DNA of 64,000 nt from IMGVR_UViG_3300027749_002876:460566-524565; one strand, 5' to 3'; counted from the stretch's first letter, positions 33,036 through 47,098 are shown. The notes: a model not told the origin generated them from the sequence alone. Made by a program: numbers and translations.

Positions 33036-33911
33036 ATGAGAATTAACGAATTTATAACAGAGTCTAGTAAGATTTGCCCACAATGTGGAATGAGAGGTTG
33101 CACGTGCAAACCTGGAAAATGTAATTGCAAACCAAAGCCTGGTTATCCAAAACAGGTTGATGAAGCCGCTAATCCAGCACAACAAGCCGCTATAGCTATT
33201 GCTATGAAAAAAGCTGGTAAAAAGCCAAAAAATATGCATGAAGAAGATGAGGGTATGTTTGGTAGATCCAAAAACGATAAACGATATTTAGATAAATTTG
33301 ATCCAACTGAAGTTATGAATATCAGTGATGATCCTAGTAAGGCACATAAAACAACGGGCAAGGGTTCATTAAGAACATCTAAGAAAGATTTAGAATTTGC
33401 ATTTGGACCACCCGGAGAAGATGATACATGGGTTTTAGAATTTAAGAATGGTTTAATTGCCACTATATACCCACAATCTAACAGTGGTGGCATGGATTGG
33501 ATCATAGGTGGTAATCATACAAACACTGAAGATTTTGTACATATGGCTTATTCAGCCGCACTTGATGAAAAACTTGAAGAGGATTGGAACAAGGTCAACC
33601 AGAAAGACAAAACATCTGGTATGAGCCGTAAGGCAGTAAAAGCATATCGTAGAGAAAATCCAGGTAGCAAATTACAAACAGCAGTTACTACTAAACCTAG
33701 TAAATTAAAGCCTGGATCAAAAGCTGCCAAACGCCGTAAGAGTTTTTGTGCTAGAATGAGTGGTAACAAAGGTCCTATGAAAAAGCCTAATGGTAAACCT
33801 ACTCCCAAAGCATTAGCACTACGTAGATGGAATTGTGAGAGTGTAGAGCAAATGGAAGAATTGGTAATGTTAGCAGAACAATTTATCCGCAATCACAAGA
33901 CTAAACTTTAA
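33036..33911 (+). CDS. MRxxEF-leader modular late protein (putative head-internal polyprotein)
   Basis: MRINEFITE; Cys-rich module; AANPAQQAAIAIAMKK module; basic RRKSFCARM...ALRRWNC module; ATAAATA at 32973-32979. Confidence 0.65.
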   Translation: MRINEFITESSKICPQCGMRGCTCKPGKCNCKPKPGYPKQVDEAANPAQQAAIAIAMKKAGKKPKNMHEEDEGMFGRSKNDKRYLDKFDPTEVMNISDDPSKAHKTTGKGSLRTSKKDLEFAFGPPGEDDTWVLEFKNGLIATIYPQSNSGGMDWIIGGNHTNTEDFVHMAYSAALDEKLEEDWNKVNQKDKTSGMSRKAVKAYRRENPGSKLQTAVTTKPSKLKPGSKAAKRRKSFCARMSGNKGPMKKPNGKPTPKALALRRWNCESVEQMEELVMLAEQFIRNHKTKL

Positions 33912-34728
33912 GTAGTTCTTCTAAAGTATATAAGTTCTTCATATAGGGTGATACATTTTCTAGTACACTACTAGCAATGTCGCCCTTCCTTCTTGGGCCG
34001 TATTTCACGTTGAAGCTAACATCATTGACTTTTTGAAACTCATCAACAATCTCACTAACAGTATATCCTACTCCGTGACCTAAACATTCTACACTATTGC
34101 TAGGTTTCTCAATAGCTTGTTTTAATGAATCACATATCTCATTTACGTGTACATAGTCACGTACACAAGTACCATCAGGTGATACATCATAATCATTACC
34201 AAAAATTGTAAACTCTTTTGATTGCATGGCCATTATTAAATTATACATTAATCCATCGGGGTTAGTGGGAGCAAAGCCTTCGCTTCCAATAACATTATAA
34301 AATCTAAAGATTGTATATGGGGTTGCTCGATGGGTTGTACAATATTCTCTTACCACATCTTCTGCCGCACGTTTGCTGATACCATAAGCACTACAACAAT
34401 CTTGTGCGGCACCGGTGCTTGCAAAGATAAAGTTCTTTGTCTTAATCTTATTCAATACATTCATTGTACCATTCAAGTTAGTTATATAATATTGAATAGG
34501 TTTCTGCTCACTTTCACCCACATTAACTAACGCGGCCAAATGAATAACACAATCAAACTCATCTTCTAAACTAAAAGGTCGATTGATATCACAATGATAG
34601 AATGTATGCGGCGACTCTTGTGGTTCTACTTTATCTAAACCATACACTTGATATTCACCCTTCAATATCTTAGTAAGATGTGAACCAATGTAACCGCTAT
34701 TACCTGTTATTAAAACTTTTTTTACCAC
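33901..34728 (-). CDS. NAD-dependent epimerase/dehydratase (GalE-like)
   Basis: ITGNSGYIG, HLAA, YGISK, RFYNV, GTCVRDYVHV. Confidence 0.9.
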   Translation of the reverse strand: MVKKVLITGNSGYIGSHLTKILKGEYQVYGLDKVEPQESPHTFYHCDINRPFSLEDEFDCVIHLAALVNVGESEQKPIQYYITNLNGTMNVLNKIKTKNFIFASTGAAQDCCSAYGISKRAAEDVVREYCTTHRATPYTIFRFYNVIGSEGFAPTNPDGLMYNLIMAMQSKEFTIFGNDYDVSPDGTCVRDYVHVNEICDSLKQAIEKPSNSVECLGHGVGYTVSEIVDEFQKVNDVSFNVKYGPRRKGDIASSVLENVSPYMKNLYTLEELLKV

Positions 34729-36053
34729 TGAAATAATTCCTCACTAGTTTCTAATGCTGGTTCAAAGATCGGATCTTTGGTTAAATATGTGTCATTGTCT
34801 GTATAGATAACTCTAAATTTATGTTTGTTAGTCAACACACTGCGAACATCATCAATACAAATTACATTACGTCCTAAATTCTTAATGAAGTCAGTATGTG
34901 TAATAGTTGTTTCATTGCAAATTTTGGCTGTATTAGTGTTAGATTTTTTACTATCAAACTCATTAAAACAATTATTCCACTTATGAAACACAGTAGCTTC
35001 TTGTTCTTGTGCATGTTGTAATGATCCTAAGTTATACCATCTTTCTGCTTTTTCAAAAATATCATATAACTCTTTTGCTTTACTTGCCATGTCTTTCTTT
35101 GTGCATTTGTAAAAGAAATTATCATTGAAGTTTTTAGTCCAGCGTTGATTTTCTAATACCAGTGTGGGCAATTGAATATGTTGTTCATAGAAAGCCATAC
35201 CATAACTCTCAACAACACTAGGATTAAACGCAATACGACTAGACTTAATAAAATCTACTTTCTCTTGTCCAACAATACTAGCACGAACATCATACATGAC
35301 TCCTAGTTTAGACAATCTATCTTCAAACTTCTTTACACCATTAGGACTAGTCATAACCTTAACCGGTAGTTTAGTCTGCTCAATCAATTCAATAAACAAC
35401 TCAGGATTCTTACCTTCTTCCCATCGACCAACAAACAGTATCCCCTCACGTTCACCTGTGTACACAGTTAATAAGTCTGGTTCAGTAATAGGTATAGGAA
35501 GATGATAGGATGATTCATTTAAATGTAGTTGATTGAATTTACTTTGAGTTCCTATATCAATGTTTGTTGTGCTTAATTGTTGGCGCATCATCACATTGGT
35601 GTTGTGTAAGAATGGATTCTTAGTGTCTTTGAATATCTGGCTTTCTAAGTGAGTGTAGGCAATGATTTGAATACAATCCTCAAGACCCATAGTACTAGCT
35701 ACTTGCACAGTTTCATATGTATTACATACAAACGCATCGTATAAGTTATTCTCTAACGCTTTGATAATACTATTACGGAAATTAGCCATGCGTTCATAAC
35801 AGAATGTATCACCATACATAAAGATGTTGCTATGCTCAGTATAACGTAATGAATCAGCAGGCGATATGATATTAGCCGGAATAGATTTGATAAACTCATT
35901 ATCTTGCGGTTCTTTGTCAGTAATGATATCAACTTTAACATTATGACTATCCATTAACTCACAAAAACTTTTTGTAAATTGTCCTATGCCACCATGTGGT
36001 ATTAATGTTTGATAGCTTACTAAAAAGCCAATTCGTTTATCGTATGTTCTCAT
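34722..36053 (-). CDS. GT-B (GT4-like) glycosyltransferase
   Basis: HGGIG, LFVGRWEEGKN, PSVVESYGMAFYE. Confidence 0.85.
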   Translation of the reverse strand: MRTYDKRIGFLVSYQTLIPHGGIGQFTKSFCELMDSHNVKVDIITDKEPQDNEFIKSIPANIISPADSLRYTEHSNIFMYGDTFCYERMANFRNSIIKALENNLYDAFVCNTYETVQVASTMGLEDCIQIIAYTHLESQIFKDTKNPFLHNTNVMMRQQLSTTNIDIGTQSKFNQLHLNESSYHLPIPITEPDLLTVYTGEREGILFVGRWEEGKNPELFIELIEQTKLPVKVMTSPNGVKKFEDRLSKLGVMYDVRASIVGQEKVDFIKSSRIAFNPSVVESYGMAFYEQHIQLPTLVLENQRWTKNFNDNFFYKCTKKDMASKAKELYDIFEKAERWYNLGSLQHAQEQEATVFHKWNNCFNEFDSKKSNTNTAKICNETTITHTDFIKNLGRNVICIDDVRSVLTNKHKFRVIYTDNDTYLTKDPIFEPALETSEELFQW

Positions 36054-36464: not shown

Positions 36465-36706
36465 CGTAACATAAAATGAATATAATCTTTCTCATCTGTG
36501 AATTTGAACGTAGTTTCAAATCCATCATCTTGTGTATCTTTATATTCATACGTCCACCTAGATTTTGTTCTACCAGGACCAAAAGTATCAACACACCAAT
36601 CTAATGGATTATTTTTATCTCTTATAGAACCGTCTGGTCCCATATAGTGTTTCCAATAATCCCAAGATAATAAAGCAATGTGTTGATATTTTTTCATGTG
36701 CCCCAC
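36455..36706 (-). CDS. Hypothetical protein
   Basis: WCVDTFG...FKFTDEKDYIHFMLRW. Confidence 0.55.
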   Translation of the reverse strand: MGHMKKYQHIALLSWDYWKHYMGPDGSIRDKNNPLDWCVDTFGPGRTKSRWTYEYKDTQDDGFETTFKFTDEKDYIHFMLRWR

Positions 36707-37542
36707 TCGTTTTTGAAAAGAGGTACTTGAAGTCTATCACTGTACCGATAACCACGATTCATTGCTTCAATAGCAACATTCTTAGCATTTAAGTTATACA
36801 ATGATTCTACACCACCGCAAGGCATGAAGTATACAGGGCCTCTGAATCCACCATTACGAAATTCTAGTACAGCTTTGTCTGCTTCAATTGCATCTTCACT
36901 AGTAGCAATAACAAACTTAAGATACACAAAGCCAATACTTTCATATTGACGAATGATGTTAGGACAAATTGCTTCACTCCACTTCTCGCCACTGATACTT
37001 AGTTTAGGACTAACACTAAATGTTAATGCATTCTTTTCTCTGTTAATCTTCCATTGTTGTAGATAGATTGATAGGTCTTGACTTAGTTCTTGTGTACCAT
37101 TAGTTTCAAAAGTAATCTCTTTGAGACCTCTCATTTTTTCGTTTGAAAGTAATTCTGGATATGCTCTTTGCCATCCAAGAAGAGGTTCACCACCAGTGAT
37201 AACAAGGTGCTCATCCATCCAGCGACCGTGAGGAAGGATAGTAAGAATAGAGTCAACAATAGAAACGGTACTGAGCATAGGACTAAGATGCTTAAATCTA
37301 GAGTCCCACGAGGCGTAGGAATCGCAACCTGTACTGACAAGCGGTAAGGATTTATAATCTGTATAATCTTGTGCTTTAATCGCAATAACATCTCTTTCAC
37401 TACTCAATTCTCCTTTATTCATGCCGAAGCCACCACACGTAAAATTGCATCCATATGTTCTAAGGAAAATACTTGGTACTCCGATATATCGGCCTTCTCC
37501 TTGTATACTATAAAAAAGTTCACTTACTTTTATGCTTGTCAT
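36694..37542 (-). CDS. queE: 7-carboxy-7-deazaguanine synthase (radical SAM)
   Basis: ELFYSIQGEG, FLRTYGCNFTC...GCDS, ITGGEP, FETNGT, SPKL. Confidence 0.92.
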   Translation of the reverse strand: MTSIKVSELFYSIQGEGRYIGVPSIFLRTYGCNFTCGGFGMNKGELSSERDVIAIKAQDYTDYKSLPLVSTGCDSYASWDSRFKHLSPMLSTVSIVDSILTILPHGRWMDEHLVITGGEPLLGWQRAYPELLSNEKMRGLKEITFETNGTQELSQDLSIYLQQWKINREKNALTFSVSPKLSISGEKWSEAICPNIIRQYESIGFVYLKFVIATSEDAIEADKAVLEFRNGGFRGPVYFMPCGGVESLYNLNAKNVAIEAMNRGYRYSDRLQVPLFKNEWGT

Positions 37543-38083
37543 TAATATGTTCTTTCAAATCATTCATTGATATATAGAGTTTTTCACAAATGAAGCCCTC
37601 TTTCTTTCGTTTACTATCGGATAAGCACCATCCCCTAATAGTTGTCTCATGTACATCGTAATATTTAGCCGCATGCCCCATTGAAGGGAATATACCATCA
37701 GGCGTAGTCACCATCATTTTCCAATTAGGTCTATCATTGTGAATTATACGTTCAATTGAATCTAAAACTGCAGGTACCTTATAGTCTCTTTTTAAGTATT
37801 CTACTGCATTTAACAGATTTTGTAAATCATCTTGGAACTTCCCGAGAGCCATATTACAGTTGGTGCAAAGTAAACCTCTTACTTTTTTTGTAACATGACA
37901 ATGATCCACTGCTAAATCCCTATTACATATATCAAGTTTATTACAAATCGCACAGCCATGATTTTGTTCTACCAACATTGCTTCGTACTGGTCGGCATTA
38001 ATTCCAAAATCTTTCATCAAATCTGACCTTTTTCGGCGTTTGTTAGTTCGTTCTTTACTATTGAGTGTTTTTTGCTTAATCAT
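37520..38083 (-). CDS. Endonuclease VII-like HNH homing endonuclease
   Basis: CAIC...LAVDHCH...VRGLLCTNCNMALG; C-terminal NUMOD/HTH-like segment; TATAAATA and AAGGAG upstream. Confidence 0.85.
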   Translation of the reverse strand: MIKQKTLNSKERTNKRRKRSDLMKDFGINADQYEAMLVEQNHGCAICNKLDICNRDLAVDHCHVTKKVRGLLCTNCNMALGKFQDDLQNLLNAVEYLKRDYKVPAVLDSIERIIHNDRPNWKMMVTTPDGIFPSMGHAAKYYDVHETTIRGWCLSDSKRKKEGFICEKLYISMNDLKEHINDKHKSK

Positions 38084-38130
38084 TATTATCTCCTTATATG
38101 TATTTATACAAGGTGACGGTAGAGTAAGAT

Positions 38131-38402: not shown

Positions 38403-38594
38403 TTACCAATGATGTAAAGTGTTTGCTATGATGAAACAACATGTTATCACATGTAGCACCACCCAGAAAGTTTTTAGGAACAATGCGATTTTTGCTTCAC
38501 CTAATGTAAGAATAGGTACATCAGGCCTGTCATCATCGGTATTACCCATTAGATGACCGGTTGCTCTTGCCCATATTTTTTCTAAGCTATTCAT
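38403..38594 (-). CDS. Small membrane protein
   Basis: KIWARATG...C-terminal TM ending HHW. Confidence 0.6.
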   Translation of the reverse strand: MNSLEKIWARATGHLMGNTDDDRPDVPILTLGEAKIALFLKTFWVVLHVITCCFIIANTLHHW

Positions 38595-39010
38595 TAAGCT
38601 ACCTCGTCTTTATTGTTGTTAGGATATTTTGCACTAGTATATCTAATAACTAATACGCTTATTGCGATAACAAATGTAGAGCCGGCTACAGCTAACATTT
38701 CAATAACATTGATTGGCTGATGACTCATTATATCTACCATATGCCGTGTCAGTGCTGTTATTGCAATGTATAGCAGGAACCTGACAGGCATATGATTGGT
38801 CTTGAAATAAATGCCCACCATTGCACCTATTTCCAAATAGATAAACATTAATAACAAGTCACCGACTGTTGCGTGATGTTTTTGAAACATTTCAGCGAAG
38901 GTCCAACCGGCAGCCCATACTGTTGCGGCACCGATACCAAACAATGCAAGCCTATGAAATATGTCTACTAAGGTATGTCCTACCTTATCTACCATTTCTG
39001 TTTTCAACAT
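38594..39010 (-). CDS. psiE: Phosphate-starvation-inducible PsiE-like membrane protein
   Basis: DLLLMFIYLEIGAMVGIYFKTNHMPVRFLLYIAITALTR. Confidence 0.85.
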   Translation of the reverse strand: MLKTEMVDKVGHTLVDIFHRLALFGIGAATVWAAGWTFAEMFQKHHATVGDLLLMFIYLEIGAMVGIYFKTNHMPVRFLLYIAITALTRHMVDIMSHQPINVIEMLAVAGSTFVIAISVLVIRYTSAKYPNNNKDEVA

Positions 39011-39492
39011 TATTCAAACTCTCTATCTTCACGATGACCGCCACGTCCTGCCATGTTGCTATCAGTCTCACGTACCTCTACTCTACAGCACCATACACGT
39101 TTAGCTTCTTCGCTACCACAGTTGGGTAAGAAGATTGTGTTGATGTATTCATATAAAAAGTCAGCAATACCTTCACAACCAGTGCGTTCTACTTCTGTGA
39201 TCTTTGCTAGTTTCAATCTACCTAGTTCTAATAGATGTTCACGCATTGGGTCATCTTGTGCGACTAATAATGTATGGTCAAACCATTCTTCTAGTTTATC
39301 TTTGAGTGGGCGTAGTCCACCAAAATCAGTTACCCAGTTACGGGCATCCAATGTATCAGCTTCAAACTCAAAGTGAAAACTCATAGCATAGCCATGAATT
39401 AAATTACAATGACTGTCAGCACGCCATTGACGATATGCGACAGGACCTATTTGTCTGTATGTCTTTGTTGAAAAGAATTTTTTGTTTGCCAT
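39010..39492 (-). CDS. queD: 6-carboxytetrahydropterin synthase (QueD/PTPS family)
   Basis: SHCNLIHGY, DFGGL, FDHT, GCE, VEVRET. Confidence 0.88.
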   Translation of the reverse strand: MANKKFFSTKTYRQIGPVAYRQWRADSHCNLIHGYAMSFHFEFEADTLDARNWVTDFGGLRPLKDKLEEWFDHTLLVAQDDPMREHLLELGRLKLAKITEVERTGCEGIADFLYEYINTIFLPNCGSEEAKRVWCCRVEVRETDSNMAGRGGHREDREFE

Positions 39493-39573
39493 GTTTTCTC
39501 CTATGTTGTATTATAGCATAGGCGGCAGAGTTTGTAAAGCGGGAGTGACGCCAAGACCGCTACTTTTATTTAA
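39490..39573 (-). promoter_or_regulatory. Structured queD leader: preQ1-I-like pseudoknot, SD-sequestering hairpin and internal sigma70 promoter
   Basis: AGCGG-UCUUGGCGUCACUC-CCGCU-UUACAAA-CUCUGCCGCC; CCUAUG/CAUAGG over SD; TTTACA-17-TATAAT at 39510-39538. Confidence 0.55.
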
Positions 39574-40272
39574 CAAAAAACCCATAACCTCTTCTTTATT
39601 AAGAATTAAATTAAATGGATCAGTTTTAATAGATTTTTCTCCTAAATATTTGAATTTTGTATTGTAGATTTTTTCCATGTCTGAATAGATAGATTCATAT
39701 TTTACTTTTTTATATTCAATATTGTGTAATATTATAGACAAATTCTTTTCCCATAATAGGTGACTATTATAAATTTCAGTTAATCCATTATTCAGACGAT
39801 TAATATCAATTGTTGCAGGTTCATTGATTTCACTATTGATTCCAAATACGTTTTTTAGGTTGTTAGCATATGAGCGGGCAATCATAAAACTTAACAATTG
39901 TTCTTTAATATCTCTTGTCAATGTGATAAATTCAAAACCTATATTTTTTAACTCTATTATTATTTTAGATAATGTTTCCTTATCATAATGATCCATCAAA
40001 AAAATTCTTACAGTTAATGATTGGTTTATATTTGTATTTTTTAATAAATTAAGTCGTTCTTCAAATCCTTCAAATATTTTAAAGTTTGAAGGAATGCTAG
40101 CAAAATTCTTTAATCTTATATTATTGTCATCATCAGTCACATATTCACTGCGATTCCAATTTTCAAAATACTCGCCCAATTGAAAGCTTGATTTTATTTC
40201 TCCGGATAATTTTTCACACAATTGACTACCTGTTCTGGGTAAACAAATAATACATGTTCTGTTGCCGTTCAT
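39511..40272 (-). CDS. Sulfotransferase-like (Stf0/P-loop) protein
   Basis: LPRTGSQ (PAPS-binding-like), LGEYF, LTRDIKEQLLS, VKYE. Confidence 0.6.
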   Translation of the reverse strand: MNGNRTCIICLPRTGSQLCEKLSGEIKSSFQLGEYFENWNRSEYVTDDDNNIRLKNFASIPSNFKIFEGFEERLNLLKNTNINQSLTVRIFLMDHYDKETLSKIIIELKNIGFEFITLTRDIKEQLLSFMIARSYANNLKNVFGINSEINEPATIDINRLNNGLTEIYNSHLLWEKNLSIILHNIEYKKVKYESIYSDMEKIYNTKFKYLGEKSIKTDPFNLILNKEEVMGFLLNKSSGLGVTPALQTLPPML

Positions 40273-41063
40273 TTTAATCCTAAATTTTTCCTAATTTTAG
40301 TTGCACTGATATTATGTGTAGCATCATCAAATATTTCTTGCTCAATCTTATAACCAACATCACGACCGTATGTAATATTCACAATGTTTGGTACAATTTG
40401 AATTTCGTATTGACCTTGATATAACATATCTAAGTCACGTTTAATAAAACTTTTAACTTGTTCGATGGCAAATGGATTACTTCCTTGCCAACCTTGACAG
40501 TCACGTATTTGTATAACTACTTGCCCAGTCTTAGCAATAGCCCGTTCAAACAACTTACGATGTCCTTCATGCCATGGTTGCCAACGACCTAGCATCTGTA
40601 CTGTTTCTTTCTGCCAATCAAACACTGGTCTGCGTCTATTATCTAATATGTGTGCGGCAATAAACTCACCCCACTTTTCACCTTTTTGTTCAGTAATTCT
40701 AAAGTCATATACTTCTGGTGGGATAAATGCTTTGTTAGTATCGTCAAATCTACCTTTATCAATAGTATCAACCCATACAGTCCAATCTGCTTTAAAGTTA
40801 TTACGCATTTCAACTAATGGTGCAACAAAGTCACATATAACATAATCACATTCAATCATATTATCTGCTAGTTCACGCATACGTAAACTTTGACGAACAC
40901 GACCTTCTGTGCTAAAGTCCCAATCGTTATACTTTTTTCGTACATCGTCAGCATTTAGCCAACCTACTTTTTTCTTATCCGCTTGTAGGTGCTCTACAAT
41001 ATGTTGTGCTATATAAGTTTTACCTGCGCCAGGCAGGCCCATTACTAATATTCTTTTAGGCAT
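40269..41063 (-). CDS. Adenylylsulfate-kinase-like domain fused to HxGH nucleotidyltransferase domain
   Basis: GLPGAGKT, LNADDVR, FSTEGR; GRWQPWHEGH, ISATKIR. Confidence 0.8.
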   Translation of the reverse strand: MPKRILVMGLPGAGKTYIAQHIVEHLQADKKKVGWLNADDVRKKYNDWDFSTEGRVRQSLRMRELADNMIECDYVICDFVAPLVEMRNNFKADWTVWVDTIDKGRFDDTNKAFIPPEVYDFRITEQKGEKWGEFIAAHILDNRRRPVFDWQKETVQMLGRWQPWHEGHRKLFERAIAKTGQVVIQIRDCQGWQGSNPFAIEQVKSFIKRDLDMLYQGQYEIQIVPNIVNITYGRDVGYKIEQEIFDDATHNISATKIRKNLGLK

Positions 41064-41523
41064 TTTTGTTTTTCTCCGCTTCTGCTACACGTTTGCGTAG
41101 ACTTGAACTGCTAAAACTATGGTCACGTTTGTTAAATATAACCTGTACACCACGGCCTGCACCCTCATTACGTCCGGTAAAATTCTTATCCTCATACTCT
41201 GTACCCAAAATACGAACATCTAACGGTAGAATCAATAACAAGTCAATTAAGTCTTGTTCAGTTTGATATACCACTACTTCATCAACATAGCGACAAGCCG
41301 CAAGTTGAATCTGTCGTTCTACAATACTTTGAATAGGTTTATTCTTAGTATCAGGTCTATCAATGGTTGGATCGGTTTGTAGCCCACAAATCAAGTAATC
41401 ACAATGATTTTTTGCTTCACTTAACATAGCAACGTGACCTGCATGAAGCATATCAAATGTGCTAAAAGTAATACCAATCTTTTTACCCTGTGCTTTTAAT
41501 TCTTTAATATGATTGAAAATCAT
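41056..41523 (-). CDS. Glycerol-3-phosphate cytidylyltransferase-like (TagD family)
   Basis: TFDMLHAGH, YVDEV, SSSSLR; start revised to MIFNH. Confidence 0.85.
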   Translation of the reverse strand: MIFNHIKELKAQGKKIGITFSTFDMLHAGHVAMLSEAKNHCDYLICGLQTDPTIDRPDTKNKPIQSIVERQIQLAACRYVDEVVVYQTEQDLIDLLLILPLDVRILGTEYEDKNFTGRNEGAGRGVQVIFNKRDHSFSSSSLRKRVAEAEKNKNA

Positions 41524-41765
41524 TTTGAAAGTGTTCTCCACATTTTAGTTTGTTCATGTTCTTTTAAGAATTCATCCTCACCCGTAAATGTAGGTGCATC
41601 ATTCATAATCTCATCCAATAACCATTTCAATTTATGTAAATCTTTTTTGATTTCAAATGTAGTAAATCCATCGTTATACGGACTGTGAAGTTCTACACCT
41701 GCAATGTAGATTTGATGATGTACACTATTATAATCCATTGGTTTTTTAAATCCCATTATTTGCAA
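41520..41765 (-). CDS. Hypothetical protein
   Basis: [13 protein letters not shown] motif. Confidence 0.6.
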
Positions 41766-42436
41766 CCTTTATTTGCAATCTGCAAAAACTCTTGTCTTGC
41801 GGCTGGATCTGTTTTGAATCCACCACCTAGACGGCAGGTAGTTGTACTTGAACCAGTATCTTCTACACCTCGGGCCGCAACACAATAATGCCTGGCATCA
41901 ATCATTACAGCTACATCTTCTGTTTCTAGTATATAACATAGTGAATGAAAAATTTGTTCAGTTAATCGTTCTTGTATTTGCGGGCGCTTACTGAAATATT
42001 CTACTATACGGTTGATTTTACTAAGGCCTAGTACCTTATCCTTTGGTACATAAGCAACGGTAGCCAAACCCGCAATAGTAATAAAATGATGTTCACATGA
42101 ACTTTGTACATTGACATTGCGTTCAACAACCATTTCATTATATTTCATTTTATTTTCTACAGTAGTACATTTTGGAAATGCTTCATAATCTAGTCCGTAG
42201 AAAATTTCATTTACATACATCTTAGCAACACGCTTGGGTGTCTCAATTAGACTATCATCAGATAAATCTAAACCAAGATATTGCATAATAATAGTGAAGT
42301 GTTCTTCAATACGATCAATCTTATCTTTTCTGTCTAAGTTGTTTGGCAATGTAGGAGTCTCAACTCCCATTTTGACTAAGTGCTGATGCACTTGTTGACC
42401 CAACTCTGGATCTGTTTTTGTTTTATTATAACTCAT
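41756..42436 (-). CDS. folE: GTP cyclohydrolase I
   Basis: [39 protein letters not shown]; start revised to MSYNK. Confidence 0.95.
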
Positions 42437-42502
42437 AGATAACCTTCCTTTGTGATGGTTTTGTTTTGATATTGTGTTACCATTGTGTAACACAAGTATT
42501 TA

Positions 42503-42715
42503 TCACTTTGTTTTAGCAACTGATTTTTTTGATTTAGCCTTAACTGCAGGCTTCATATTAGCTAATTCTACACTAGCACAAGCTTCACGCACCTCATTAA
42601 CTAATGCGTCCCAATCCCATTTTAATTCAGTACGACCATCAGGAAAAGTAGTCACAGTTAAGTGACTACCTTTAACTACTGTTGGTTCTGCAAGTTGAAT
42701 TTTCTTGCGAGCCAT
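42503..42715 (-). CDS. Hypothetical protein
   Basis: 70-aa ORF in operon. Confidence 0.6.
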   Translation of the reverse strand: MARKKIQLAEPTVVKGSHLTVTTFPDGRTELKWDWDALVNEVREACASVELANMKPAVKAKSKKSVAKTK

Positions 42716-42717
42716 GG

Positions 42718-42912
42718 TTAAGCCTTAGCTTTTGCTTCTGCTCTTGCGGCTTTTTCTGCTGTAATTTCATTACGGCGAGCCTTAACTGCTTTAGCTAGTT
42801 CTGCTAATGCTTTACGTGCCCTAGTACCGGCGGCTGCATTACCCTTGTTAAATTTATCGTTCTCAGCATTGTATGCTTCTAAACTATTTTCAATATCATT
42901 TTGTGCGCTCAT
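42718..42912 (-). CDS. Histone H1-like (Hc1-type) DNA-binding protein
   Basis: KFNKGNAAAGTRARKALAELAK...RRNEI; start MSAQND after AAGGAG. Confidence 0.8.
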   Translation of the reverse strand: MSAQNDIENSLEAYNAENDKFNKGNAAAGTRARKALAELAKAVKARRNEITAEKAARAEAKAKA

Positions 42913-42922
42913 AATTTTCTCC

Positions 42923-44122
42923 TTAATATTTTGCTTCACGGGTGTGTTTGCGATAATCACTATCCATACGCAACCATTGTTGTCCGTTACCTTCTAGGAT
43001 ATCACAAATTCTATCGATTGTACTGTCAGTCCAATCACTAATCTTTCCTTGATTTACATGCGGTTGATGTAACATATTATATAACTTAATTGTTGCATCT
43101 TCAACACTCCAGGGCGTATACAGTCTTGTATAGTCATTCGCAAATGTTTCTGGGAAACTGCGATATGCCGGATACAATACATTGCAACCCAAACTATCTG
43201 CTTCACTGACTGTGTTACTCACCCAGTCTTGTAATGCACAATTAAACAATACTCTTGTATCATTTAATAACTCATAGTATGCGTTCTTATCTAGGTCTTG
43301 ATATACTTTTAATAGTCCACGATTTTGCATATCTTGTGTACGTTTCATGTAACTATCGTTATTGCTTTTTAGTTTACTACCGCTGAACACACAGAATTCT
43401 ACACCACGATATACACCATGACGATCCTTCTCACCGTACCGGTTATAGAATTCTTCAATCACATCCATGTAGAAGTCAGGTTGCTTTTCTTGATCCCATC
43501 TAGCACTAAATGCAATACGCATTGTACGTTCATTGAATGGCTTGATGACATTATTTACACGGCTACGAACTTCTTCTTTGCCAAATGCTAAGCCTGAGAT
43601 ATTGTAGATCGGTGCCTTCCAACCCGCAATCTTCATATGCATTACCATTTCTTCATTACTAGCAAGTACACCATCAACGAATGAATCAACCATCTTTTCA
43701 TAGTGACCCATGAACTCACTCATGCCCCATACATGTACGAAATCATCCGGATCGATTGACTGAGCAAGACAACGGACAAATATACGAGGACGGAGATTAA
43801 TAGGAACTTGCTTAAGTATATAAGGAAGACTTTCAATGCCCGGCTGAAACATATCTTCAAAGTATACAATATCTTCATAACTACACTCACCTTTTTTCAT
43901 CATCTTTACTAGATTCATTAATTGACTCATACCAAAGTATGTACGTCCATGAGCATCTAATACTTGTCCGGTAACAATAGCTTGGTCATCACTTAATGTT
44001 TCGCCGGGAACGATAACATAGTTAATGCCTCTACGTTTGAATACACGTTCATTCCAGTCTTGTAACTGTAGTGTGTATCTTGCTTTGTAAGGCTCTAGGC
44101 CCATATAAAATAACTTATGCAT
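42923..44122 (-). CDS. GT-B glycosyltransferase (phage type)
   Basis: FSARWDQEKQP, CALQDWVSNTVSEA, PAYRSFPE. Confidence 0.75.
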   Translation of the reverse strand: MHKLFYMGLEPYKARYTLQLQDWNERVFKRRGINYVIVPGETLSDDQAIVTGQVLDAHGRTYFGMSQLMNLVKMMKKGECSYEDIVYFEDMFQPGIESLPYILKQVPINLRPRIFVRCLAQSIDPDDFVHVWGMSEFMGHYEKMVDSFVDGVLASNEEMVMHMKIAGWKAPIYNISGLAFGKEEVRSRVNNVIKPFNERTMRIAFSARWDQEKQPDFYMDVIEEFYNRYGEKDRHGVYRGVEFCVFSGSKLKSNNDSYMKRTQDMQNRGLLKVYQDLDKNAYYELLNDTRVLFNCALQDWVSNTVSEADSLGCNVLYPAYRSFPETFANDYTRLYTPWSVEDATIKLYNMLHQPHVNQGKISDWTDSTIDRICDILEGNGQQWLRMDSDYRKHTREAKY

Positions 44123-44873
44123 TTTCTCTTTCTATATCTAGTTCATCACATTCTTCACCATACTGTATTTCTACAATACGACATGGTGTATCATATGGAT
44201 TACTTAGTTGATGCCAATCACCTTGTGAAATTTTTACTTGACCAAACGTTGACAATTCAATTGGAAGTAAACTGTAACCACTTGACAATTTTGTATATAG
44301 TATACACTTACCTTCTGTAACATGCCAAAATTCACTTCGTTTAAAATGCCGTTGCATACTTAAACTTTGACCCGGCTCTACTGTTAGTTCTTTTACTTTA
44401 CATCCACTTACATCATGTAGTATACGATAGTATCCCCACTGACGCAATGTTTTAGGTTGTTTCCATTCACGTAGTATCCAACTACTACTGTTCTTTTTGT
44501 CATCCCCACCCACACCAAATACAAATTCTACATCATCAAATATCATTTCGGGAATGTTATCTTTAGTTCTATCTCCCCCATTAGCAAATATAATATTTGT
44601 TTTTGGGTACATTTCTTTGACTTTGCGAATGGCATCAATGGCGGTATCATCACTATCATCAAACTCTATTACTTTATGCACTTGATGTAAATTTTCAATG
44701 ATTATTTTACGTTCTTGAATAGGCATAAAAGGTTGACCTTTTTTACGGGTCAACCATGCGTCACTATTAACTCCTACTATCAGTAAGAAACCTAAATGCT
44801 TAGCGGAATTGAAATATTCAATATGGCCACTATGCAAGGGGTCAAAGCCCCCAGTGACTAACACTATCTTCAT
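44115..44873 (-). CDS. Cytidylyltransferase fused to mannose-6-phosphate-isomerase-type cupin
   Basis: TGGFDPLHSGH, FANGGDR, NSSS; RQWGYY, LSMQRH, WHQLSNP, EIQYG. Confidence 0.88.
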   Translation of the reverse strand: MKIVLVTGGFDPLHSGHIEYFNSAKHLGFLLIVGVNSDAWLTRKKGQPFMPIQERKIIIENLHQVHKVIEFDDSDDTAIDAIRKVKEMYPKTNIIFANGGDRTKDNIPEMIFDDVEFVFGVGGDDKKNSSSWILREWKQPKTLRQWGYYRILHDVSGCKVKELTVEPGQSLSMQRHFKRSEFWHVTEGKCILYTKLSSGYSLLPIELSTFGQVKISQGDWHQLSNPYDTPCRIVEIQYGEECDELDIERENA

Positions 44874-45076
44874 GGACGCATATCCTCTTGCCATTGATCC
44901 TTAGCCCATTTGCCGGCAATTTGTTTTTGATGTTGACGGTATGCGAAACTCCGCATGTCATACAATGATGTTTCATCAAACTTGTACCCAAAGTCCTGAC
45001 AGAATTCAAGGTACTTTTCAAGATCCTCAAAAATCTGATTGATACGTGGGTTAGGTTGATATTGTTGTTTTGCCAT
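44870..45076 (-). CDS. Hypothetical protein
   Basis: IFEDLEKYLEFCQDFGYKFDE. Confidence 0.65.
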   Translation of the reverse strand: MAKQQYQPNPRINQIFEDLEKYLEFCQDFGYKFDETSLYDMRSFAYRQHQKQIAGKWAKDQWQEDMRP

Positions 45077-45087
45077 TTTTAATTCCT

Positions 45088-45543
45088 TTAAATAGCGAGT
45101 TGTTGATAAGGTTTGTTTGTGTTATAGACAATAGTAGCCCCGTTCTCATTATCTTCTGATACTTGAATAGCAATATTACGATCTGGATATCGAGTTGCAA
45201 TGACTTCATAGAGGTCATCACTAATCATTTCACAACTTTTGTAATCCAACGCAAGAATGCCTTGAGAATATTGATTCTCTAACCATCTTTTAAACTGAAT
45301 AAACTCAATATCACGGTCGTTGTGAAATACTTCAATAGACACTTCAAAGTGAAAGATGTGTCTATGTGGAGTAGCTAAAAAGCTAACATCATACTCATCA
45401 CCTGTTGCCAAGTTAGGGTCTGTTGCCGCCGCTGGGTATTTATGAATACCTTCTTTTTGAAAACGCACAAAAATTGTACGTAATGCATGTTGTTTGATAC
45501 GTACACGTTTCTCGGTCAATGCCTGTATATGTTGTTCTTGCAT
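45088..45543 (-). CDS. Second T-fold (QueD-paralogous) protein
   Basis: EGIH...PHRHIFHF...DRDIEFIQFKR...SCEMIS...VSEDNENG, His/SCE/E pattern like PTPS. Confidence 0.65.
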   Translation of the reverse strand: MQEQHIQALTEKRVRIKQHALRTIFVRFQKEGIHKYPAAATDPNLATGDEYDVSFLATPHRHIFHFEVSIEVFHNDRDIEFIQFKRWLENQYSQGILALDYKSCEMISDDLYEVIATRYPDRNIAIQVSEDNENGATIVYNTNKPYQQLAI

Positions 45544-45544
45544 A

Positions 45545-47098
45545 TTATTCTCCTAGTACTTTTGAAATTTCATCATCACTATCTTCAATAGCTTCTTCAA
45601 CTTCCGGTTCACTATCAGTTACGTCAAACAATTGGTCAAACATTGTCATAGCATTCATTGCTTTCTTGCCACTTAAACCCTGACTACCTGACTTCATCTG
45701 CATCCAGAAGCTACTATGTGATTCTATCATATCTAGGCTCTTTTGTCTATCTTTTTGTGCAAATATCTTATCAACAATTTCACCAAAATGCTCATCATCA
45801 AACTTGCTCATAACCATTTTAGGCATGATGCCCTTATCATACTGGCGATTAGCTTCTTGTACAGCAGTCATATGCATATAAACATTATGACTCTGTAGTA
45901 ATGTATAACTCAATGTATCCCAACTTGTTTTAGTTTCTTTACCATGTTGACCAATAAAGCCTTGACCACGATAACAAAGGTCCTTCATCAACATAAGGTC
46001 CGTTACTGGACTATCTGTAAACTTGTCATGGATATTATCTTGTAGTACAGCATCACTATACTTACGATTATCATTAGCATAACTTTTCTTCTCGGCAGTC
46101 TTTTCCATACTGTATGCCCACTTCTTATCGTGTTCAATACTATTGTTAAAGTATGCTAGACCTTTAGCCGCACTAAAGAATGGACTTGCACAGTCAAATG
46201 TAATCTGTAGTTTAGGGTTGTGATACTTACGAATAGCTTTTTGAATGTCACTGAACAATACAGCATATTCCATAATGCTTACACCCAAGCAATGAATCAA
46301 ATCATGTTTACCCTCTACCAGTAAACCATCATGTATGATATCAACTAATCTACGCAACATCAAATGAACATCAATCTTGTTCTGTCCACCGAATGCCCAA
46401 CCATTAAAGTGATTATCTGGATAGACATTTGGATCACAATACTTCTTCATTTCTTCATACCAATCGTCTGATTGTTTATGATTGCGACCCTGCAATACAT
46501 TTAAGAACTTACATTTACCATTACGGTTCTTAATGAAGTATTCGTTATTGATGTGAGTAGCAGTAATAGCTTCTTCAATCGTACTGATACCATGTGCTGA
46601 CTTACCAGTCTTTGGGTCTTTGATATTGAATGTAGTAAGACTTTGTGATGGGATATCTAAACACATACCATAGTCCATGTATGTGTCCATCCAGTTCAAT
46701 ACAGCTTTACGTTTAATCATAGCACGTGGGCAGTTAGGATCTTTCCAGTCTGCTGGCCACTGACATTTAAGAATCTGAAAACCACCACTATCACCTAACA
46801 TGAACGTACCCTCTTCACGTTCTCTAATAATACTTTCACTAGGATCGTCTTTAGTAGTATCTAAGTTAGCATGACCAGCACTGTATAAGCCCCACTTATA
46901 ATAGTATAGGCCTTCTTTACTGTTTAAGAAGTTAAGTTTTTCAACATCACCATTAAAGCCGGCCGGGATACGTGCTTTAGGGAAGTAATCTTCACCTTTG
47001 CGTTGTTTACCTAAGCCAGCAATATAGAAACTACTGACTGCAGGTAAGAACAATGCCCAATCGGGCTTGTGCTGTGCTGATAGATTAACTTGTTCCAT
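45545..47098 (-). CDS. dpdA: TGT-fold transglycosylase, DpdA-like (DNA 7-deazaguanine insertion)
   Basis: GDSGGFQ, MCLDIP, VLQG, GWAFGG, IHCLG, TFDCASP, HN; sits with folE/queD/queE beside the replication genes. Confidence 0.75.
   Translation of the reverse strand: MEQVNLSAQHKPDWALFLPAVSSFYIAGLGKQRKGEDYFPKARIPAGFNGDVEKLNFLNSKEGLYYYKWGLYSAGHANLDTTKDDPSESIIREREEGTFMLGDSGGFQILKCQWPADWKDPNCPRAMIKRKAVLNWMDTYMDYGMCLDIPSQSLTTFNIKDPKTGKSAHGISTIEEAITATHINNEYFIKNRNGKCKFLNVLQGRNHKQSDDWYEEMKKYCDPNVYPDNHFNGWAFGGQNKIDVHLMLRRLVDIIHDGLLVEGKHDLIHCLGVSIMEYAVLFSDIQKAIRKYHNPKLQITFDCASPFFSAAKGLAYFNNSIEHDKKWAYSMEKTAEKKSYANDNRKYSDAVLQDNIHDKFTDSPVTDLMLMKDLCYRGQGFIGQHGKETKTSWDTLSYTLLQSHNVYMHMTAVQEANRQYDKGIMPKMVMSKFDDEHFGEIVDKIFAQKDRQKSLDMIESHSSFWMQMKSGSQGLSGKKAMNAMTMFDQLFDVTDSEPEVEEAIEDSDDEISKVLGE

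What the first reader, a model, noticed from the sequence alone, without database searches (positions are those of the whole stretch)
33901..47098. 7-deazaguanine pathway without queC, interleaved with glycosyl-, nucleotidyl- and sulfo-transfer genes: candidate new DNA hypermodification
Seen: folE, queD, queE, a DpdA/TGT-like gene and a second T-fold gene lie in one co-oriented block directly downstream of polymerase and clamp. Mixed in are two GT-B glycosyltransferases, three HxGH nucleotidyltransferase domains, an isomerase cupin, a GalE-like epimerase, and APS-kinase-like and sulfotransferase-like genes. No queC, queF or Gat-QueC is in the window. Known: FolE-QueD-QueE makes CDG, and DpdA swaps deazaguanines into phage DNA. 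Glycosylation of phage DNA is well known on hydroxymethyl-pyrimidines, but I know of none on deazapurines. Inference: a CDG-derived base further decorated with a sugar (possibly sulfated or polyol-phosphorylated), giving an undescribed anti-restriction/anti-CRISPR modification.
Basis: partly seen in the sequence, partly recalled or inferred. Interest (0 to 1): 0.82.

Follow-up and report, generated by a model that had tools for sequence, protein, structure and literature searches.

The report
Deazaguanine DNA-modification cluster with dedicated glycosyltransferase
A jumbo freshwater phage carries the known gene set for replacing guanine in its DNA with 7-deazaguanine, plus a sugar-transferring enzyme that sits beside these genes in nearly every phage lineage examined, which suggests an undescribed sugar-decorated purine in phage DNA.

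Summary
The missing queC is already explained. The 151-aa "second T-fold" gene carries the DpdL signature LxxxHRHxF; DpdL is the predicted CDG decarboxylase of Cui 2023. FolE-QueD-QueE-DpdL plus a TGT-superfamily transglycosylase is therefore the known 7-deazaguanine (dDG) route.

The 399-aa gene at 42923-44122 is new. It is a confidently modelled GT4/GT-B glycosyltransferase. Its family lies within a few genes of DpdL and a long DpdA-like gene in every lineage examined:
- six cultured groups: PA5oct, ACP17, X1/BUDD, BCSR5, Phosso, BUCT-ZZ01
- three distant metagenomic contigs
- 84 of 85 further loci, each with at least one deazaguanine gene

DpdL phages split into two exclusive types. One has the short phiST-type DpdA3 and no GT; dDG was measured there. 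The other has the GT plus a long DpdA-like protein.

I infer a glycosylated 7-deazaguanine; the chemistry is untested. The other sugar genes occur only in this freshwater clade, and variably: HxGH nucleotidyltransferases, cupin, kinase, and a weakly supported sulfotransferase. The second GT and the GalE-like gene each have one counterpart outside the clade.

The 524-kb record looks like a chimera of one 347.6-kb genome and part of a relative.

The parts
47911..50628 (-). Family B DNA polymerase, at the head of the co-oriented block
   Evidence: PF00136 E 5e-42 and PF03104 E 1e-22
47102..47833 (-). Sliding-clamp-like protein (243 aa)
   Evidence: phrog_12062 E 3e-29. phmmer 3e-38 to the Phosso gene annotated as sliding clamp, and 4e-34 to PA5oct EST35_0314.
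45545..47098 (-). Long DpdA-like guanine transglycosylase of the TGT superfamily (517 aa); not the phiST-type DpdA3
   Evidence: DSGGFQ motif. Invariant DSGGxQ, M.LD.P, QG, H.LG and FD across five lineages. Atlas neighbours are TGT and DpdA clusters. 34% identical to PA5oct EST35_0316. No Pfam hit. No significant match to phiST DpdA3.
45088..45543 (-). DpdL, a QueD-like T-fold protein and the predicted 7-carboxy-7-deazaguanine decarboxylase
   Evidence: LATPHRHIF matches the LxxxHRHxF signature of Cui 2023. 56% identical to the ACP17 DpdL homologue (E 2e-41) and 34% to phiST DpdL. phrog_17812 E 1e-31.
44870..45076 (-). Small ORF (68 aa) conserved only within the freshwater clade; function unknown
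   Evidence: Present in most close relatives. No Pfam hit.
44115..44894 (-). Fusion of an HxGH nucleotidyltransferase and a mannose-6-phosphate-isomerase-type cupin; its 5' end overlaps the GT gene's 3' neighbour region by 8 bases with the GT start
   Evidence: PF01467 E 3e-12 and PF01050 E 1.5e-18. PDB matches to cytidylyltransferases. Absent from about a third of close relatives.
42923..44122 (-). GT4-type GT-B glycosyltransferase (p399), the conserved partner of DpdL and the long DpdA-like gene
   Evidence: AlphaFold2 pLDDT 94.9. Foldseek BshA/MshA/PimA at E about 1e-12. 48 of 71 family members hit PF00534. Invariant R208 and K213 and nearly invariant E307. Synteny census.
42718..42960 (-). 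Hc1-type histone H1-like basic protein (80 aa, pI 9.9)
   Evidence: PF07432 E 4.5e-11. An Hc1 gene also sits between FolE and the GT in L089.
41756..42493 (-). FolE, GTP cyclohydrolase I
   Evidence: PF01227 E 2e-61
41056..41541 (-). TagD/ECT/RfaE-domain-II-like HxGH nucleotidyltransferase (161 aa)
   Evidence: PF01467 E 2e-12. PDB ethanolamine-phosphate cytidylyltransferase 1e-18 and glycerol-3-phosphate cytidylyltransferase 3.5e-12.
40269..41063 (-). APS-kinase-like P-loop kinase fused to an NMNAT-like HxGH nucleotidyltransferase
   Evidence: PF01583 E 1e-11. PDB SAT/APS kinase 1.6e-5 and NMNAT 1.3e-4. Its 89% paralogue in the record's other arm lies far from the second module copy.
39511..40272 (-). 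Sulfotransferase-like protein (253 aa); weak assignment
   Evidence: Invariant PRxGS and R120..Q125..S128. 3 of 22 family members hit PF13469. One member carries a JGI NodH label. Found in only 3 of 80 related loci.
39010..39492 (-). QueD, 6-carboxy-tetrahydropterin synthase, with motif CxxxHGY
   Evidence: PF01242 E 9e-16. The same CxxxHGY motif occurs in the phiST and ACP17 QueD.
38594..39010 (-). PsiE-family membrane protein; an inserted passenger present in few relatives
   Evidence: PF06146 E 4e-22; distribution
37520..38083 (-). Endonuclease VII; a passenger absent from the second module copy
   Evidence: PF02945 E 7e-22
36694..37542 (-). QueE-like radical-SAM CDG synthase
   Evidence: phrog_2076 E 1.6e-51. 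TIGR QueE models E 1e-13, below cut-off. Cysteines at 32, 36 and 73, with no canonical CxxxCxxC.
34722..36053 (-). Second GT4-like GT-B glycosyltransferase (443 aa)
   Evidence: PF00534 E 7.5e-4. Atlas neighbours are GT4 families. A 38% homologue lies between FolE and the DpdA-like gene in cyanophage BUCT-ZZ01.
33901..34728 (-). Short GalE-like NDP-sugar 4-epimerase (275 aa)
   Evidence: PF01370 E 1e-33 and TIGR01179 E 6e-47, below cut-off. An epimerase-like fragment also lies in the PA5oct cluster.

Best explanation
The locus is a 7-deazaguanine DNA-modification module of a type not yet described, which I call type 2.

Proposed pathway:
1. FolE, QueD and QueE convert GTP to 7-carboxy-7-deazaguanine (CDG).
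2. DpdL removes the carboxyl group to give 7-deazaguanine. This is why no QueC is needed.
3. The 517-aa TGT-superfamily protein exchanges guanine in phage DNA for this base.
4. The GT4 glycosyltransferase p399 uses an NDP-sugar to glycosylate the deazaguanine. This gene is always found with DpdL and a long DpdA-like gene, and never with the short phiST-type DpdA3.

Timing of step 4: The strict pairing with one DpdA type slightly favours glycosylation of the free base, with a matched transglycosylase then inserting the product. Decoration after insertion remains possible.

Accessory genes: In this freshwater jumbo-phage clade, further genes probably supply or extend the sugar. These are an HxGH nucleotidyltransferase-cupin fusion overlapping the GT start, a TagD-like nucleotidyltransferase, a GalE-like epimerase and a second GT4. 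The kinase-nucleotidyltransferase and the sulfotransferase-like gene are sporadic add-ons.

Status of each claim:
- Shown: gene identities, folds, motifs and synteny.
- Taken from the literature: the chemistry of steps 1-3, with dDG measured only in phiST-type phages.
- Inferred: the acceptor of the GT, and everything about the sugar.
For: Gene identities.

DpdL: the signature matches Cui 2023. QueC and QueF are absent from the whole record.

Transglycosylase: the TGT catalytic motifs are invariant in the long DpdA-like family.

p399 as an active GT4:
- Fold.
- Pfam hits in 48 of 71 family members.
- Conserved R-x4-K and E donor-site residues.

The GT is adjacent to DpdL and/or the DpdA-like gene in:
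- BUCT-ZZ01, ACP17, X1 and PA5oct (hhalign 99.6% for PA5oct), Phosso, BCSR5
- three distant metagenomic members
- 84 of 85 further loci, each with at least one deazaguanine gene; 57 have the long DpdA-like gene, mostly within about 190 bp

Exclusive split of DpdL phages: one group has the short DpdA3, the other has the GT plus the long DpdA-like gene. Positive controls were included.

DNA evidence from a type-2 phage: PA5oct DNA resists restriction enzymes with G in their sites and is sensed by END nucleases (PMC12191111).

Other support:
- Cui et al. could not reconstitute dDG from ACP17 dpdL plus dpdA without other genes.
- Bacterial glycosylases attack dDG-modified DNA, which gives a selective reason to decorate the base.
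- GT4-like enzymes are already known to glycosylate pyrimidines in phage DNA.
Against: - No chemical data exist for any type-2 phage.
- dDG has no hydroxyl or amine at C7, so the atom that would accept the sugar is unknown. C-glycosylation by a retaining GT4 has no precedent that I know of.
- Both GTs are acidic (pI 5.6-5.8). The nearest solved structures act on small molecules, not DNA.
- The DpdA-like protein is not recognised by the Pfam TGT or DpdA models, and its AlphaFold model was poor (pLDDT 50).
- The sugar-nucleotide genes are not conserved outside this clade.
- Similar cupin, HIGH-nucleotidyltransferase and GT sets in jumbo phages have been read as surface-polysaccharide modification (PMC7824862).
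Confidence: 0.5

Rival explanations
1. The DNA carries plain dDG, or another already known deazaguanine. The GTs and sugar-nucleotide genes work on something else, such as host surface polysaccharide (superinfection exclusion) or virion proteins. They sit in the cluster only because it is an early-gene region.
For: dDG needs no GT in phiST. Iyer et al. 2021 read cupin, HIGH-nucleotidyltransferase and GT clusters in jumbo phages as polysaccharide modification. The nucleotidyltransferases, kinase and sulfotransferase-like genes come and go among close relatives. The kinase-NT paralogue in the other arm lies elsewhere. The record holds other GTs and an epimerase far from the cluster.
Against: The p399 family was found only beside deazaguanine genes: 84 of 85 loci plus ten other lineages. 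It often lies 0-10 bp from the DpdA-like gene. It spans phages with PolB and PolA replication modules and hosts from Pseudomonas to Synechococcus. It was never found with the phiST-type DpdA3. A surface-glycan enzyme has no reason to track one DpdA type. This rival fits the accessory genes better than it fits p399.
Confidence: 0.2
2. The GT is needed for the base exchange itself, not for decoration. It might glycosylate or scaffold the long DpdA-like enzyme, or make a transient glycosylated intermediate that is removed later. The final DNA base would still be dDG.
For: The GT plus long DpdA-like pair replaces the short DpdA3 as a unit, while DpdL is shared. On the DpdL tree the two types are interleaved: 5 changes, equal to the shuffled mean. 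dpdL plus dpdA from ACP17 alone gave no dDG in E. coli.
Against: No such role is known for a GT4. The same reconstitution also failed for phiST, which has no GT. The conserved donor-site residues point to a real sugar transfer. A second GT and an epimerase recur in clusters of other lineages (BUCT-ZZ01 and PA5oct), which fits building a glycan.
Confidence: 0.15
3. The TGT-like enzyme and the GT act on tRNA rather than DNA, as a phage version of queuosine-type modification with glycosylation. The eukaryotic mannosyl-queuosine transferase QTMAN would be the model.
For: A QTMAN cluster appears among the language-model neighbours of p399 (rank 56). The window also encodes a TilS-like tRNA-modifying domain next to PolB.
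Against: QTMAN_N was not among the Pfam hits of 71 family members. The cluster is embedded in replication genes in every lineage. DNA of the type-2 phage PA5oct resists G-site restriction enzymes. DpdL phages of the other type have fully substituted DNA.
Confidence: 0.07
4. FolE, the PTPS-like proteins and the GT make a glycosylated pterin, as cyanobacterial BGluT does, rather than a DNA base.
For: Tetrahydrobiopterin glucosyltransferases are among the structural matches (ranks 37, 45 and 48). FolE and PTPS-family enzymes start pterin synthesis.
Against: QueE and a TGT-like enzyme have no role in pterin glycoside synthesis, yet they are conserved in the clusters. The BGluT matches are no better than dozens of other GT4 enzymes. 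The hosts are mostly not cyanobacteria.
Confidence: 0.03

Closest known systems
dDG system of Cellulophaga phage phiST (FolE, QueD, QueE, DpdL, DpdA3; Cui et al. 2023, NAR, PMC10516641)
   Same: FolE, QueD (same CxxxHGY motif), QueE and DpdL (LxxxHRHxF). No QueC. The cluster lies next to the DNA polymerase. A TGT-superfamily enzyme is present.
   Different: The transglycosylase is a different, long family (416-540 aa). It has no significant similarity to phiST DpdA3, and phiST-type DpdA3 is absent. A GT4 glycosyltransferase is always present. No MazG-like gene is in the cluster. The product has not been measured.
Acidovorax phage ACP17 and Pseudomonas jumbo phage PA5oct deazaguanine clusters
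   Same: Same type-2 core: DpdA-like, GT4 and DpdL adjacent to one another, with FolE, QueD or QueE nearby. In PA5oct and Phosso the order PolB, clamp-like gene, then the module is also kept.
   Different: They lack the nucleotidyltransferase, cupin, kinase, sulfotransferase-like and second-GT genes. PA5oct has an epimerase-like fragment. In these records the GT is annotated as a hypothetical protein.
T-even phage 5-hydroxymethylcytosine glucosylation (alpha- and beta-glucosyltransferases) and the newer 5hmC / 5-hydroxycytosine glycan systems
   Same: A phage GT-B enzyme genetically tied to a base-replacement pathway. Multiple GTs and sugar-nucleotide genes can build longer glycans. GT4-like DNA GTs are known.
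   Different: The acceptor there is a pyrimidine hydroxyl made by a thymidylate-synthase-like or TET enzyme. Here the only TS homologue is a true ThyA and no TET is present. The linked base is a deazapurine without an obvious hydroxyl.
QTMAN/GTDC1, the GT4-like tRNA-queuosine mannosyltransferase
   Same: A GT-B enzyme that glycosylates a 7-deazaguanine derivative in a nucleic acid.
   Different: It acts on the cyclopentenediol of queuosine in tRNA. No QTMAN_N domain was detected in the p399 family, and no queuosine side chain can be made here.

Membership tests
Phage 7-deazaguanine DNA modification system (Dpd-type; Hutinet 2019, Cui 2023) | CDG synthesis genes FolE, QueD and QueE | tested here: met
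   PF01227 E 2e-61, PF01242 E 9e-16, phrog QueE-like E 2e-51
Phage 7-deazaguanine DNA modification system (Dpd-type; Hutinet 2019, Cui 2023) | A DpdA (TGT-superfamily) guanine transglycosylase | tested here: inconclusive
   Motifs equivalent to the catalytic Asp residues are invariant, and atlas neighbours are TGT/DpdA clusters. Against this, the Pfam TGT and DpdA models do not hit, the PDB profile search is empty, and the AlphaFold model is poor.
Phage 7-deazaguanine DNA modification system (Dpd-type; Hutinet 2019, Cui 2023) | Deazaguanine present in virion DNA | not testable with these tools
   The phage is known only from metagenomes, and the public runs are held as contigs.
dDG subsystem (DpdL plus DpdA3, phiST type) | DpdL with LxxxHRHxF in place of the QueD motif CxxxHGH | tested here: met
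   LATPHRHIF. Alignment with phiST, ACP17 and 12 others.
dDG subsystem (DpdL plus DpdA3, phiST type) | No QueC or QueF | tested here: met
   Whole-record searches found nothing over the cut-offs. The weak QueC hits have no Pfam support, and the QueF hits are FolE cross-matches. The PP-loop gene at 50940-51536 is TilS-like.
dDG subsystem (DpdL plus DpdA3, phiST type) | phiST-type DpdA3 transglycosylase | tested here: not met
   A profile of six phiST-type DpdA3 proteins finds nothing in the record, while phiST and D479 score at 1e-99 and 1e-133 as controls. hhalign between the families gives probability 20% or less.
GT4 (retaining GT-B) glycosyltransferases | Two-Rossmann GT-B fold | tested here: met
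   pLDDT 94.9. More than 400 PDB matches at E <= 0.001, with GT4 enzymes at the top.
GT4 (retaining GT-B) glycosyltransferases | Donor-site R-x4-K and the glutamate of the C-terminal domain | tested here: met
   R208 and K213 are invariant, and E307 is conserved in at least 90% of 69 sequences. The mapping to GT4 motifs comes from my knowledge of PimA and MshA.
GT4 (retaining GT-B) glycosyltransferases | Sugar-transfer activity and identity of the acceptor | not testable with these tools
   Needs an enzyme assay.
PAPS synthesis plus sulfotransfer | ATP sulfurylase, APS kinase and a PAPS-dependent sulfotransferase | tested here: inconclusive
   The APS-kinase-like domain matches at E 1e-11, below the NCBIfam cut-offs. 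The fused HxGH domain resembles NMNAT (GRWQPWHEGH), not sulfurylase. The sulfotransferase assignment is weak.
Hydroxymethyl-pyrimidine glycosylation (T4-like or TET-based) | dCMP/dUMP hydroxymethylase or a TET/JBP dioxygenase | tested here: not met
   The single TS homologue has the thymidylate-synthase Asn (PFNIAS). No Tet_JBP match.
Jumbo-phage surface-polysaccharide modification clusters (Iyer et al. 2021) | Cupin isomerase, HIGH-superfamily nucleotidyltransferase and paralogous GTs that vary between related phages | tested here: met
   These components are present and variable. This fits the accessory genes but not p399, whose distribution follows DpdL.

The most novel reading that the evidence does not exclude
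Type-2 DpdL phages carry a glycosylated 7-deazaguanine in their DNA. They form a very large environmental group (761 GT clusters at 50% identity) and include the cultured phages PA5oct, ACP17, X1, BCSR5, Phosso and BUCT-ZZ01. To my knowledge this would be the first sugar-decorated purine analogue in any genome. It would be made by a co-adapted pair: a GT4 and a new DpdA subfamily. In this freshwater jumbo clade the sugar would be extended by a second GT and possibly by a polyol-phosphate or sulfate group.
Probability: 0.4. Interest if true: 0.9.

Novelty: new variant of a known kind. Interest (0 to 1): 0.75.

Why it matters
As far as I know, every described sugar modification of phage DNA sits on a pyrimidine. 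A glycosylated deazapurine would be a new chemical class of DNA base.

It would also address open questions:
- Why a large group of phages pair DpdL with a different transglycosylase.
- Possibly why dDG could not be rebuilt from ACP17 genes alone.

It would predict resistance to newly found defences that recognise plain 7-deazaguanine, such as Dag glycosylases and possibly END nucleases.

The module occurs in cultured Pseudomonas, Acidovorax, Xanthomonas, Burkholderia, Sinorhizobium and Synechococcus phages. The hypothesis can therefore be tested at once by mass spectrometry and by GT knock-outs.

Even if the sugar goes elsewhere, the split of DpdL systems into two exclusive types, and the new long DpdA-like family, refine the published classification.

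Tried and rejected
- **Nucleotide search for relatives.** A megablast of the region against 50,697 phage records found nothing. Protein-level searches were needed.
- **DpdA-like gene by sequence models.** Pfam TGT and DpdA, NCBIfam, and PDB searches with the sequence and with a profile all failed. A shallow alignment gave an unusable AlphaFold model (pLDDT 50), so I ran no fold search on it.
- **Weak QueC matches at C1:429037 and C1:137325.** Rejected: no Pfam support at E 0.01.
- **Weak QueF matches.** These are FolE paralogues.
- **PP-loop gene next to PolB as a QueC substitute.** It is a TilS N-terminal domain (122 bits, over the cut-off). It is absent from the other lineages' clusters.
- **A hydroxymethyl-pyrimidine acceptor for the GTs.** Rejected: only a true ThyA, and no TET.
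- **The two GTs as paralogues.** Only the donor domain aligns (hhalign E 5e-6).
- **Failed locus searches.** A search seeded with P0265 found nothing. The 69-sequence alignment was too diverse for pattern scanning. A smaller alignment worked.
- **Cui 2023 supplements.** None are held, so I could not check their gene tables for ACP17.
- **Modification signals in reads.** The public runs holding this sequence are kept only as contigs, so I did not use read laying.

Full report
**1. What is in the sequence**

From 50628 down to 33901 all sizeable ORFs lie on the minus strand, packed head to tail.

| Window coordinates | Gene | Evidence |
|---|---|---|
| 47911-50628 | PolB | |
| 47102-47833 | 243-aa protein, homologous to the Phosso gene annotated as sliding clamp | |
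| 41756-42493 | FolE | |
| 39010-39492 | QueD | |
| 36694-37542 | QueE-like radical-SAM enzyme | |
| 33901-34728 | GalE-like epimerase | |
| 44115-44894 | HxGH nucleotidyltransferase fused to a mannose-6-phosphate-isomerase cupin | |
| 41056-41541 | TagD/RfaE-II-like HxGH nucleotidyltransferase | |
| 40269-41063 | APS-kinase-like kinase fused to a third HxGH domain | |

The 253-aa gene at 39511-40272 is only weakly sulfotransferase-like.

The whole 524-kb record has no QueC or QueF over the family cut-offs and no Tet/JBP match. Its only thymidylate-synthase homologue is a true ThyA. A PP-loop gene just upstream of PolB is a TilS catalytic domain, not QueC.

**2. The missing queC has a published explanation**

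The 151-aa "second T-fold" protein carries LATPHRHIF. This is exactly the LxxxHRHxF signature that Cui et al. (2023, PMC10516641) use to define DpdL. DpdL is the QueD paralogue proposed to decarboxylate CDG to 7-deazaguanine. It is 56% identical to the DpdL homologue of Acidovorax phage ACP17 and 34% identical to that of Cellulophaga phage phiST.

phiST encodes FolE, QueD, QueE and DpdL but no QueC. All its guanine is replaced by 2'-deoxy-7-deazaguanosine. The base pathway here is therefore a known kind.

**3. The transglycosylase**

The 517-aa protein (45545-47098) is missed by the Pfam TGT and DpdA models and by PDB sequence searches. My AlphaFold model, built from a shallow alignment, was poor.

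Several lines still place it in the TGT superfamily:
- It contains DSGGFQ.
- An alignment with the neighbouring genes of PA5oct, ACP17, X1, BUCT-ZZ01 and BCSR5 keeps DSGGxQ, M.LD.P, QG, H.LG and FD invariant. From my memory of Z. mobilis TGT, these correspond to Asp102, Asp156 and the nucleophile Asp280.
- Language-model and structure neighbours of its family are TGT- and DpdA-labelled viral clusters.

It is not the phiST-type DpdA3. Profile comparisons are insignificant. A profile of six phiST-type proteins finds nothing in this record, while the controls score at 1e-99 and 1e-133.

**4. The 399-aa gene is a real glycosyltransferase and belongs to the module**

Its family is large: 761 clusters at 50% identity. 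Evidence that it is an active GT4:
- 48 of 71 aligned members hit Glycos_transf_1.
- The AlphaFold model has pLDDT 94.9.
- The model matches GT4 enzymes such as BshA, MshA and PimA at E about 1e-12.
- R208, K213 and E307 are conserved. They are in the positions of the GT4 donor-binding R-x4-K pair and glutamate.

Where the family is found, by lineage:

| Phage or locus | Gene order around the GT |
|---|---|
| BUCT-ZZ01 (cyanophage) | DpdA-like, DpdL, GT |
| ACP17 | DpdA-like, GT, DpdL, QueE |
| Xanthomonas X1 | GT, DpdA-like, DpdL, QueE |
| PA5oct | DpdA-like, GT, DpdL (hhalign probability 99.6%) |
| Phosso | DpdL, GT |
| BCSR5 | GT, DpdA-like |
| Three metagenomic members (31-32% identical) | GT beside DpdL |

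In a further 85 loci (80 IMG/VR and 5 MAG contigs), 62 contained DpdL. 57 contained the long DpdA-like gene, mostly within about 190 bp of the GT. 43, 40 and 39 contained QueE, FolE and QueD. The only locus with none of these was a 44-residue partial match.

The GT does not assort independently of dpdA.

**5. Two exclusive types of DpdL system**

Clustering the neighbourhoods of all DpdL-bearing phages in the isolate collection gave a clean split.

| Type | Lineages | Transglycosylase | GT |
|---|---|---|---|
| 1 | phiST group, RHph_I1_18, Bakedbeans, Ahp1_CNU-2021, D479, MA9V-3 | short phiST-type DpdA3 | none near DpdL in any; none genome-wide in the five non-phiST genomes (which had no positive control in that run) |
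| 2 | this clade, PA5oct group, Phosso, ACP17, X1/BUDD, BCSR5, BUCT-ZZ01 | long DpdA-like protein; no phiST-type DpdA3 | present |

None of the 85 extra GT loci had a short DpdA3.

On a DpdL tree the two types are interleaved. The tree needs 5 changes, the same as shuffled labels, and one well-supported PA5oct-Ahp1 pair crosses types. The tree is short and weakly supported. It gives no sign that DpdL itself differs between types. What is swapped is the short DpdA3 against the pair of GT plus long DpdA-like gene.

**6. Mechanism**

*Established elsewhere:* GTP to CDG by FolE, QueD and QueE. DpdL is the proposed decarboxylase. Base exchange is by a TGT-type enzyme.

*Inferred here:* the GT transfers a sugar from an NDP-sugar to the deazaguanine.

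The GT tracks one transglycosylase family and is never seen with the other. I therefore slightly favour glycosylation of the free base, followed by insertion by a matched enzyme. Decoration after insertion, as T4 glucosyltransferases do, is also possible.

Indirect support from the literature:
[quoted passage not shown] It is also sensed by END nucleases that target hypermodified DNA (PMC12191111).
- Cui et al. could not obtain dDG from ACP17 dpdL plus dpdA and suggested that other enzymes are needed. The phiST pair also failed, so this is weak.
- Many integron glycosylases attack the fully dDG-substituted vibriophage VP1 (bioRxiv 2025.10.29.685425). That is the kind of pressure that would select for further decoration.

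The main weakness is chemical. dDG offers no obvious oxygen or nitrogen at C7, so the attachment atom is unknown.

**7. The other sugar genes**

Among 80 loci from close relatives (79-100% identity in the DpdA-like protein), the following genes are conserved wherever the contig extends far enough: PolB, the clamp-like gene, the DpdA-like gene, DpdL, the GT, FolE, QueD and QueE, plus the TagD-like nucleotidyltransferase in most.

The remaining genes are less regular:
- The nucleotidyltransferase-cupin fusion, the kinase-nucleotidyltransferase, the second GT and the epimerase are variable.
- The sulfotransferase-like gene is in only three loci.

None of the nucleotidyltransferases, the kinase or the sulfotransferase-like gene was found in the clusters of other lineages.

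Two points tie some of these genes to the module:
- The cupin fusion's gene overlaps the GT start by 8 bases.
- The second GT has a 38% homologue between FolE and the DpdA-like gene in BUCT-ZZ01, and PA5oct has an epimerase-like fragment in its cluster.

I read them as clade-specific donor supply and glycan extension. The published alternative is surface-polysaccharide modification (PMC7824862), and for these accessory genes it remains a fair rival. Sulfation is not supported as a conserved feature.

**8. Literature check**

Five full-text searches and targeted reading found no description of a glycosyltransferase in deazaguanine clusters, and none of a glycosylated deazaguanine in DNA. The 2024 MMBR review was not available, and the supplements of Cui 2023 are not held. 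A mention there cannot be excluded.

**9. The record itself**

The last 4,089 bases of the contig repeat C1:172,924-177,012 at 99.6% identity, which gives a unit of 347,553 bp. The first 173 kb is a gene-by-gene inverted copy of part of that unit, diverged to 45-98% amino-acid identity. It includes a second complete module at C1:18.7-39 kb.

Contigs of relatives reach 330-360 kb. The 524-kb "genome" is therefore most likely a chimera of one complete jumbo-phage genome and part of a related one. The window lies in the complete unit.

Near-identical sequence occurs in several independent freshwater metagenomes.

**10. Verdict**

- I file the locus as a new variant of a known kind of system.

Noticed in passing
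Whole record. Window 59912-64000 equals C1:520477-524565.: The last 4,089 bases are a 99.6% direct repeat of C1:172924-177012, which gives a 347,553-bp unit. C1:1-172923 is an inverted copy of part of that unit, with genes 45-98% identical at the amino-acid level. The 524-kb record is probably a chimera of one complete genome and part of a relative, not a true megaphage.
   Followed up: partly
G000 C1:18719-33869 (outside the window): A second, diverged copy of the whole module: PolB 90%, DpdA-like 89%, DpdL 87%, GT 93%, FolE 85%, QueD 98%, QueE 84%, second GT 84%, GalE-like 73%. It lacks the kinase-NT, the sulfotransferase-like gene and endonuclease VII. It serves as a natural comparison that shows which genes are dispensable.
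   Followed up: partly
window 51589-52542 and 57616-58566 (minus strand): Two members of an ORF family of about 315 aa. The family has at least 17 copies scattered over the record (60-73% identity) and no Pfam match. Function unknown.
   Followed up: partly
window 42718-42960 (minus strand); also L089:6621-6851: An Hc1-type histone H1-like protein lies between the GT and FolE, followed by a second small basic ORF at 42503-42715. A distant PolA-type phage contig has an Hc1 gene in the same position.
   Followed up: partly
window 50940-51536 (minus strand): A stand-alone TilS N-terminal PP-loop domain (TIGR02432, 122 bits) lies immediately upstream of PolB. It lacks the tRNA-binding C-terminal domains of TilS.
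   Followed up: partly
window 55232-57595, 54034-55230 and 53225-54037 (minus strand): Three genes upstream of the replication block: a 787-aa protein with an Amidoligase_2 domain, a chitinase-class-I-like protein, and a non-specific DNA/RNA endonuclease.
   Followed up: no
L083:7093-7554 (Synechococcus phage BUCT-ZZ01): A phosphoribosyltransferase (PF00156, E 3e-13; annotated as xanthine-guanine PRT) sits between QueE and QueD in this type-2 cluster. This hints that the deazaguanine base might also be turned into a nucleotide, a pre-replicative route.
   Followed up: no
L085:8332-8865 (Xanthomonas phage X1): A 177-aa PAPS-reductase-type PP-loop protein lies inside the X1 cluster between FolE and the GT. 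It could activate the CDG carboxylate in the way QueC does.
   Followed up: no
L107:14215-15366 (Vibrio phage Bakedbeans gp176); also L111:14524-15405: In these type-1 phages DpdL is the C-terminal part of a longer protein (383 and 293 aa). This suggests a fusion with an unidentified N-terminal domain.
   Followed up: no
L119-L135 and L089 (PolA-type phage contigs): These loci have the GT, DpdL, QueE, FolE and QueD, but my profiles detect neither the long nor the short DpdA. An uncharacterised gene of about 257 aa occupies the expected place in L089 and may be a third transglycosylase type.
   Followed up: no
window 36694-37542 (minus strand): The QueE-like protein has cysteines at 32 and 36 (CNFTC) but no third cysteine in the canonical CxxxCxxC spacing. 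The next cysteine is at position 73.
   Followed up: no
window 30434-31495 and 31930-32955 (minus strand); 33036-33911 (plus strand): Downstream of the module lie a UvdE UV endonuclease and a fusion of a PD-(D/E)XK nuclease domain with a Dam-type N6-adenine methyltransferase. A lone plus-strand DUF6321 gene is also there.
   Followed up: no
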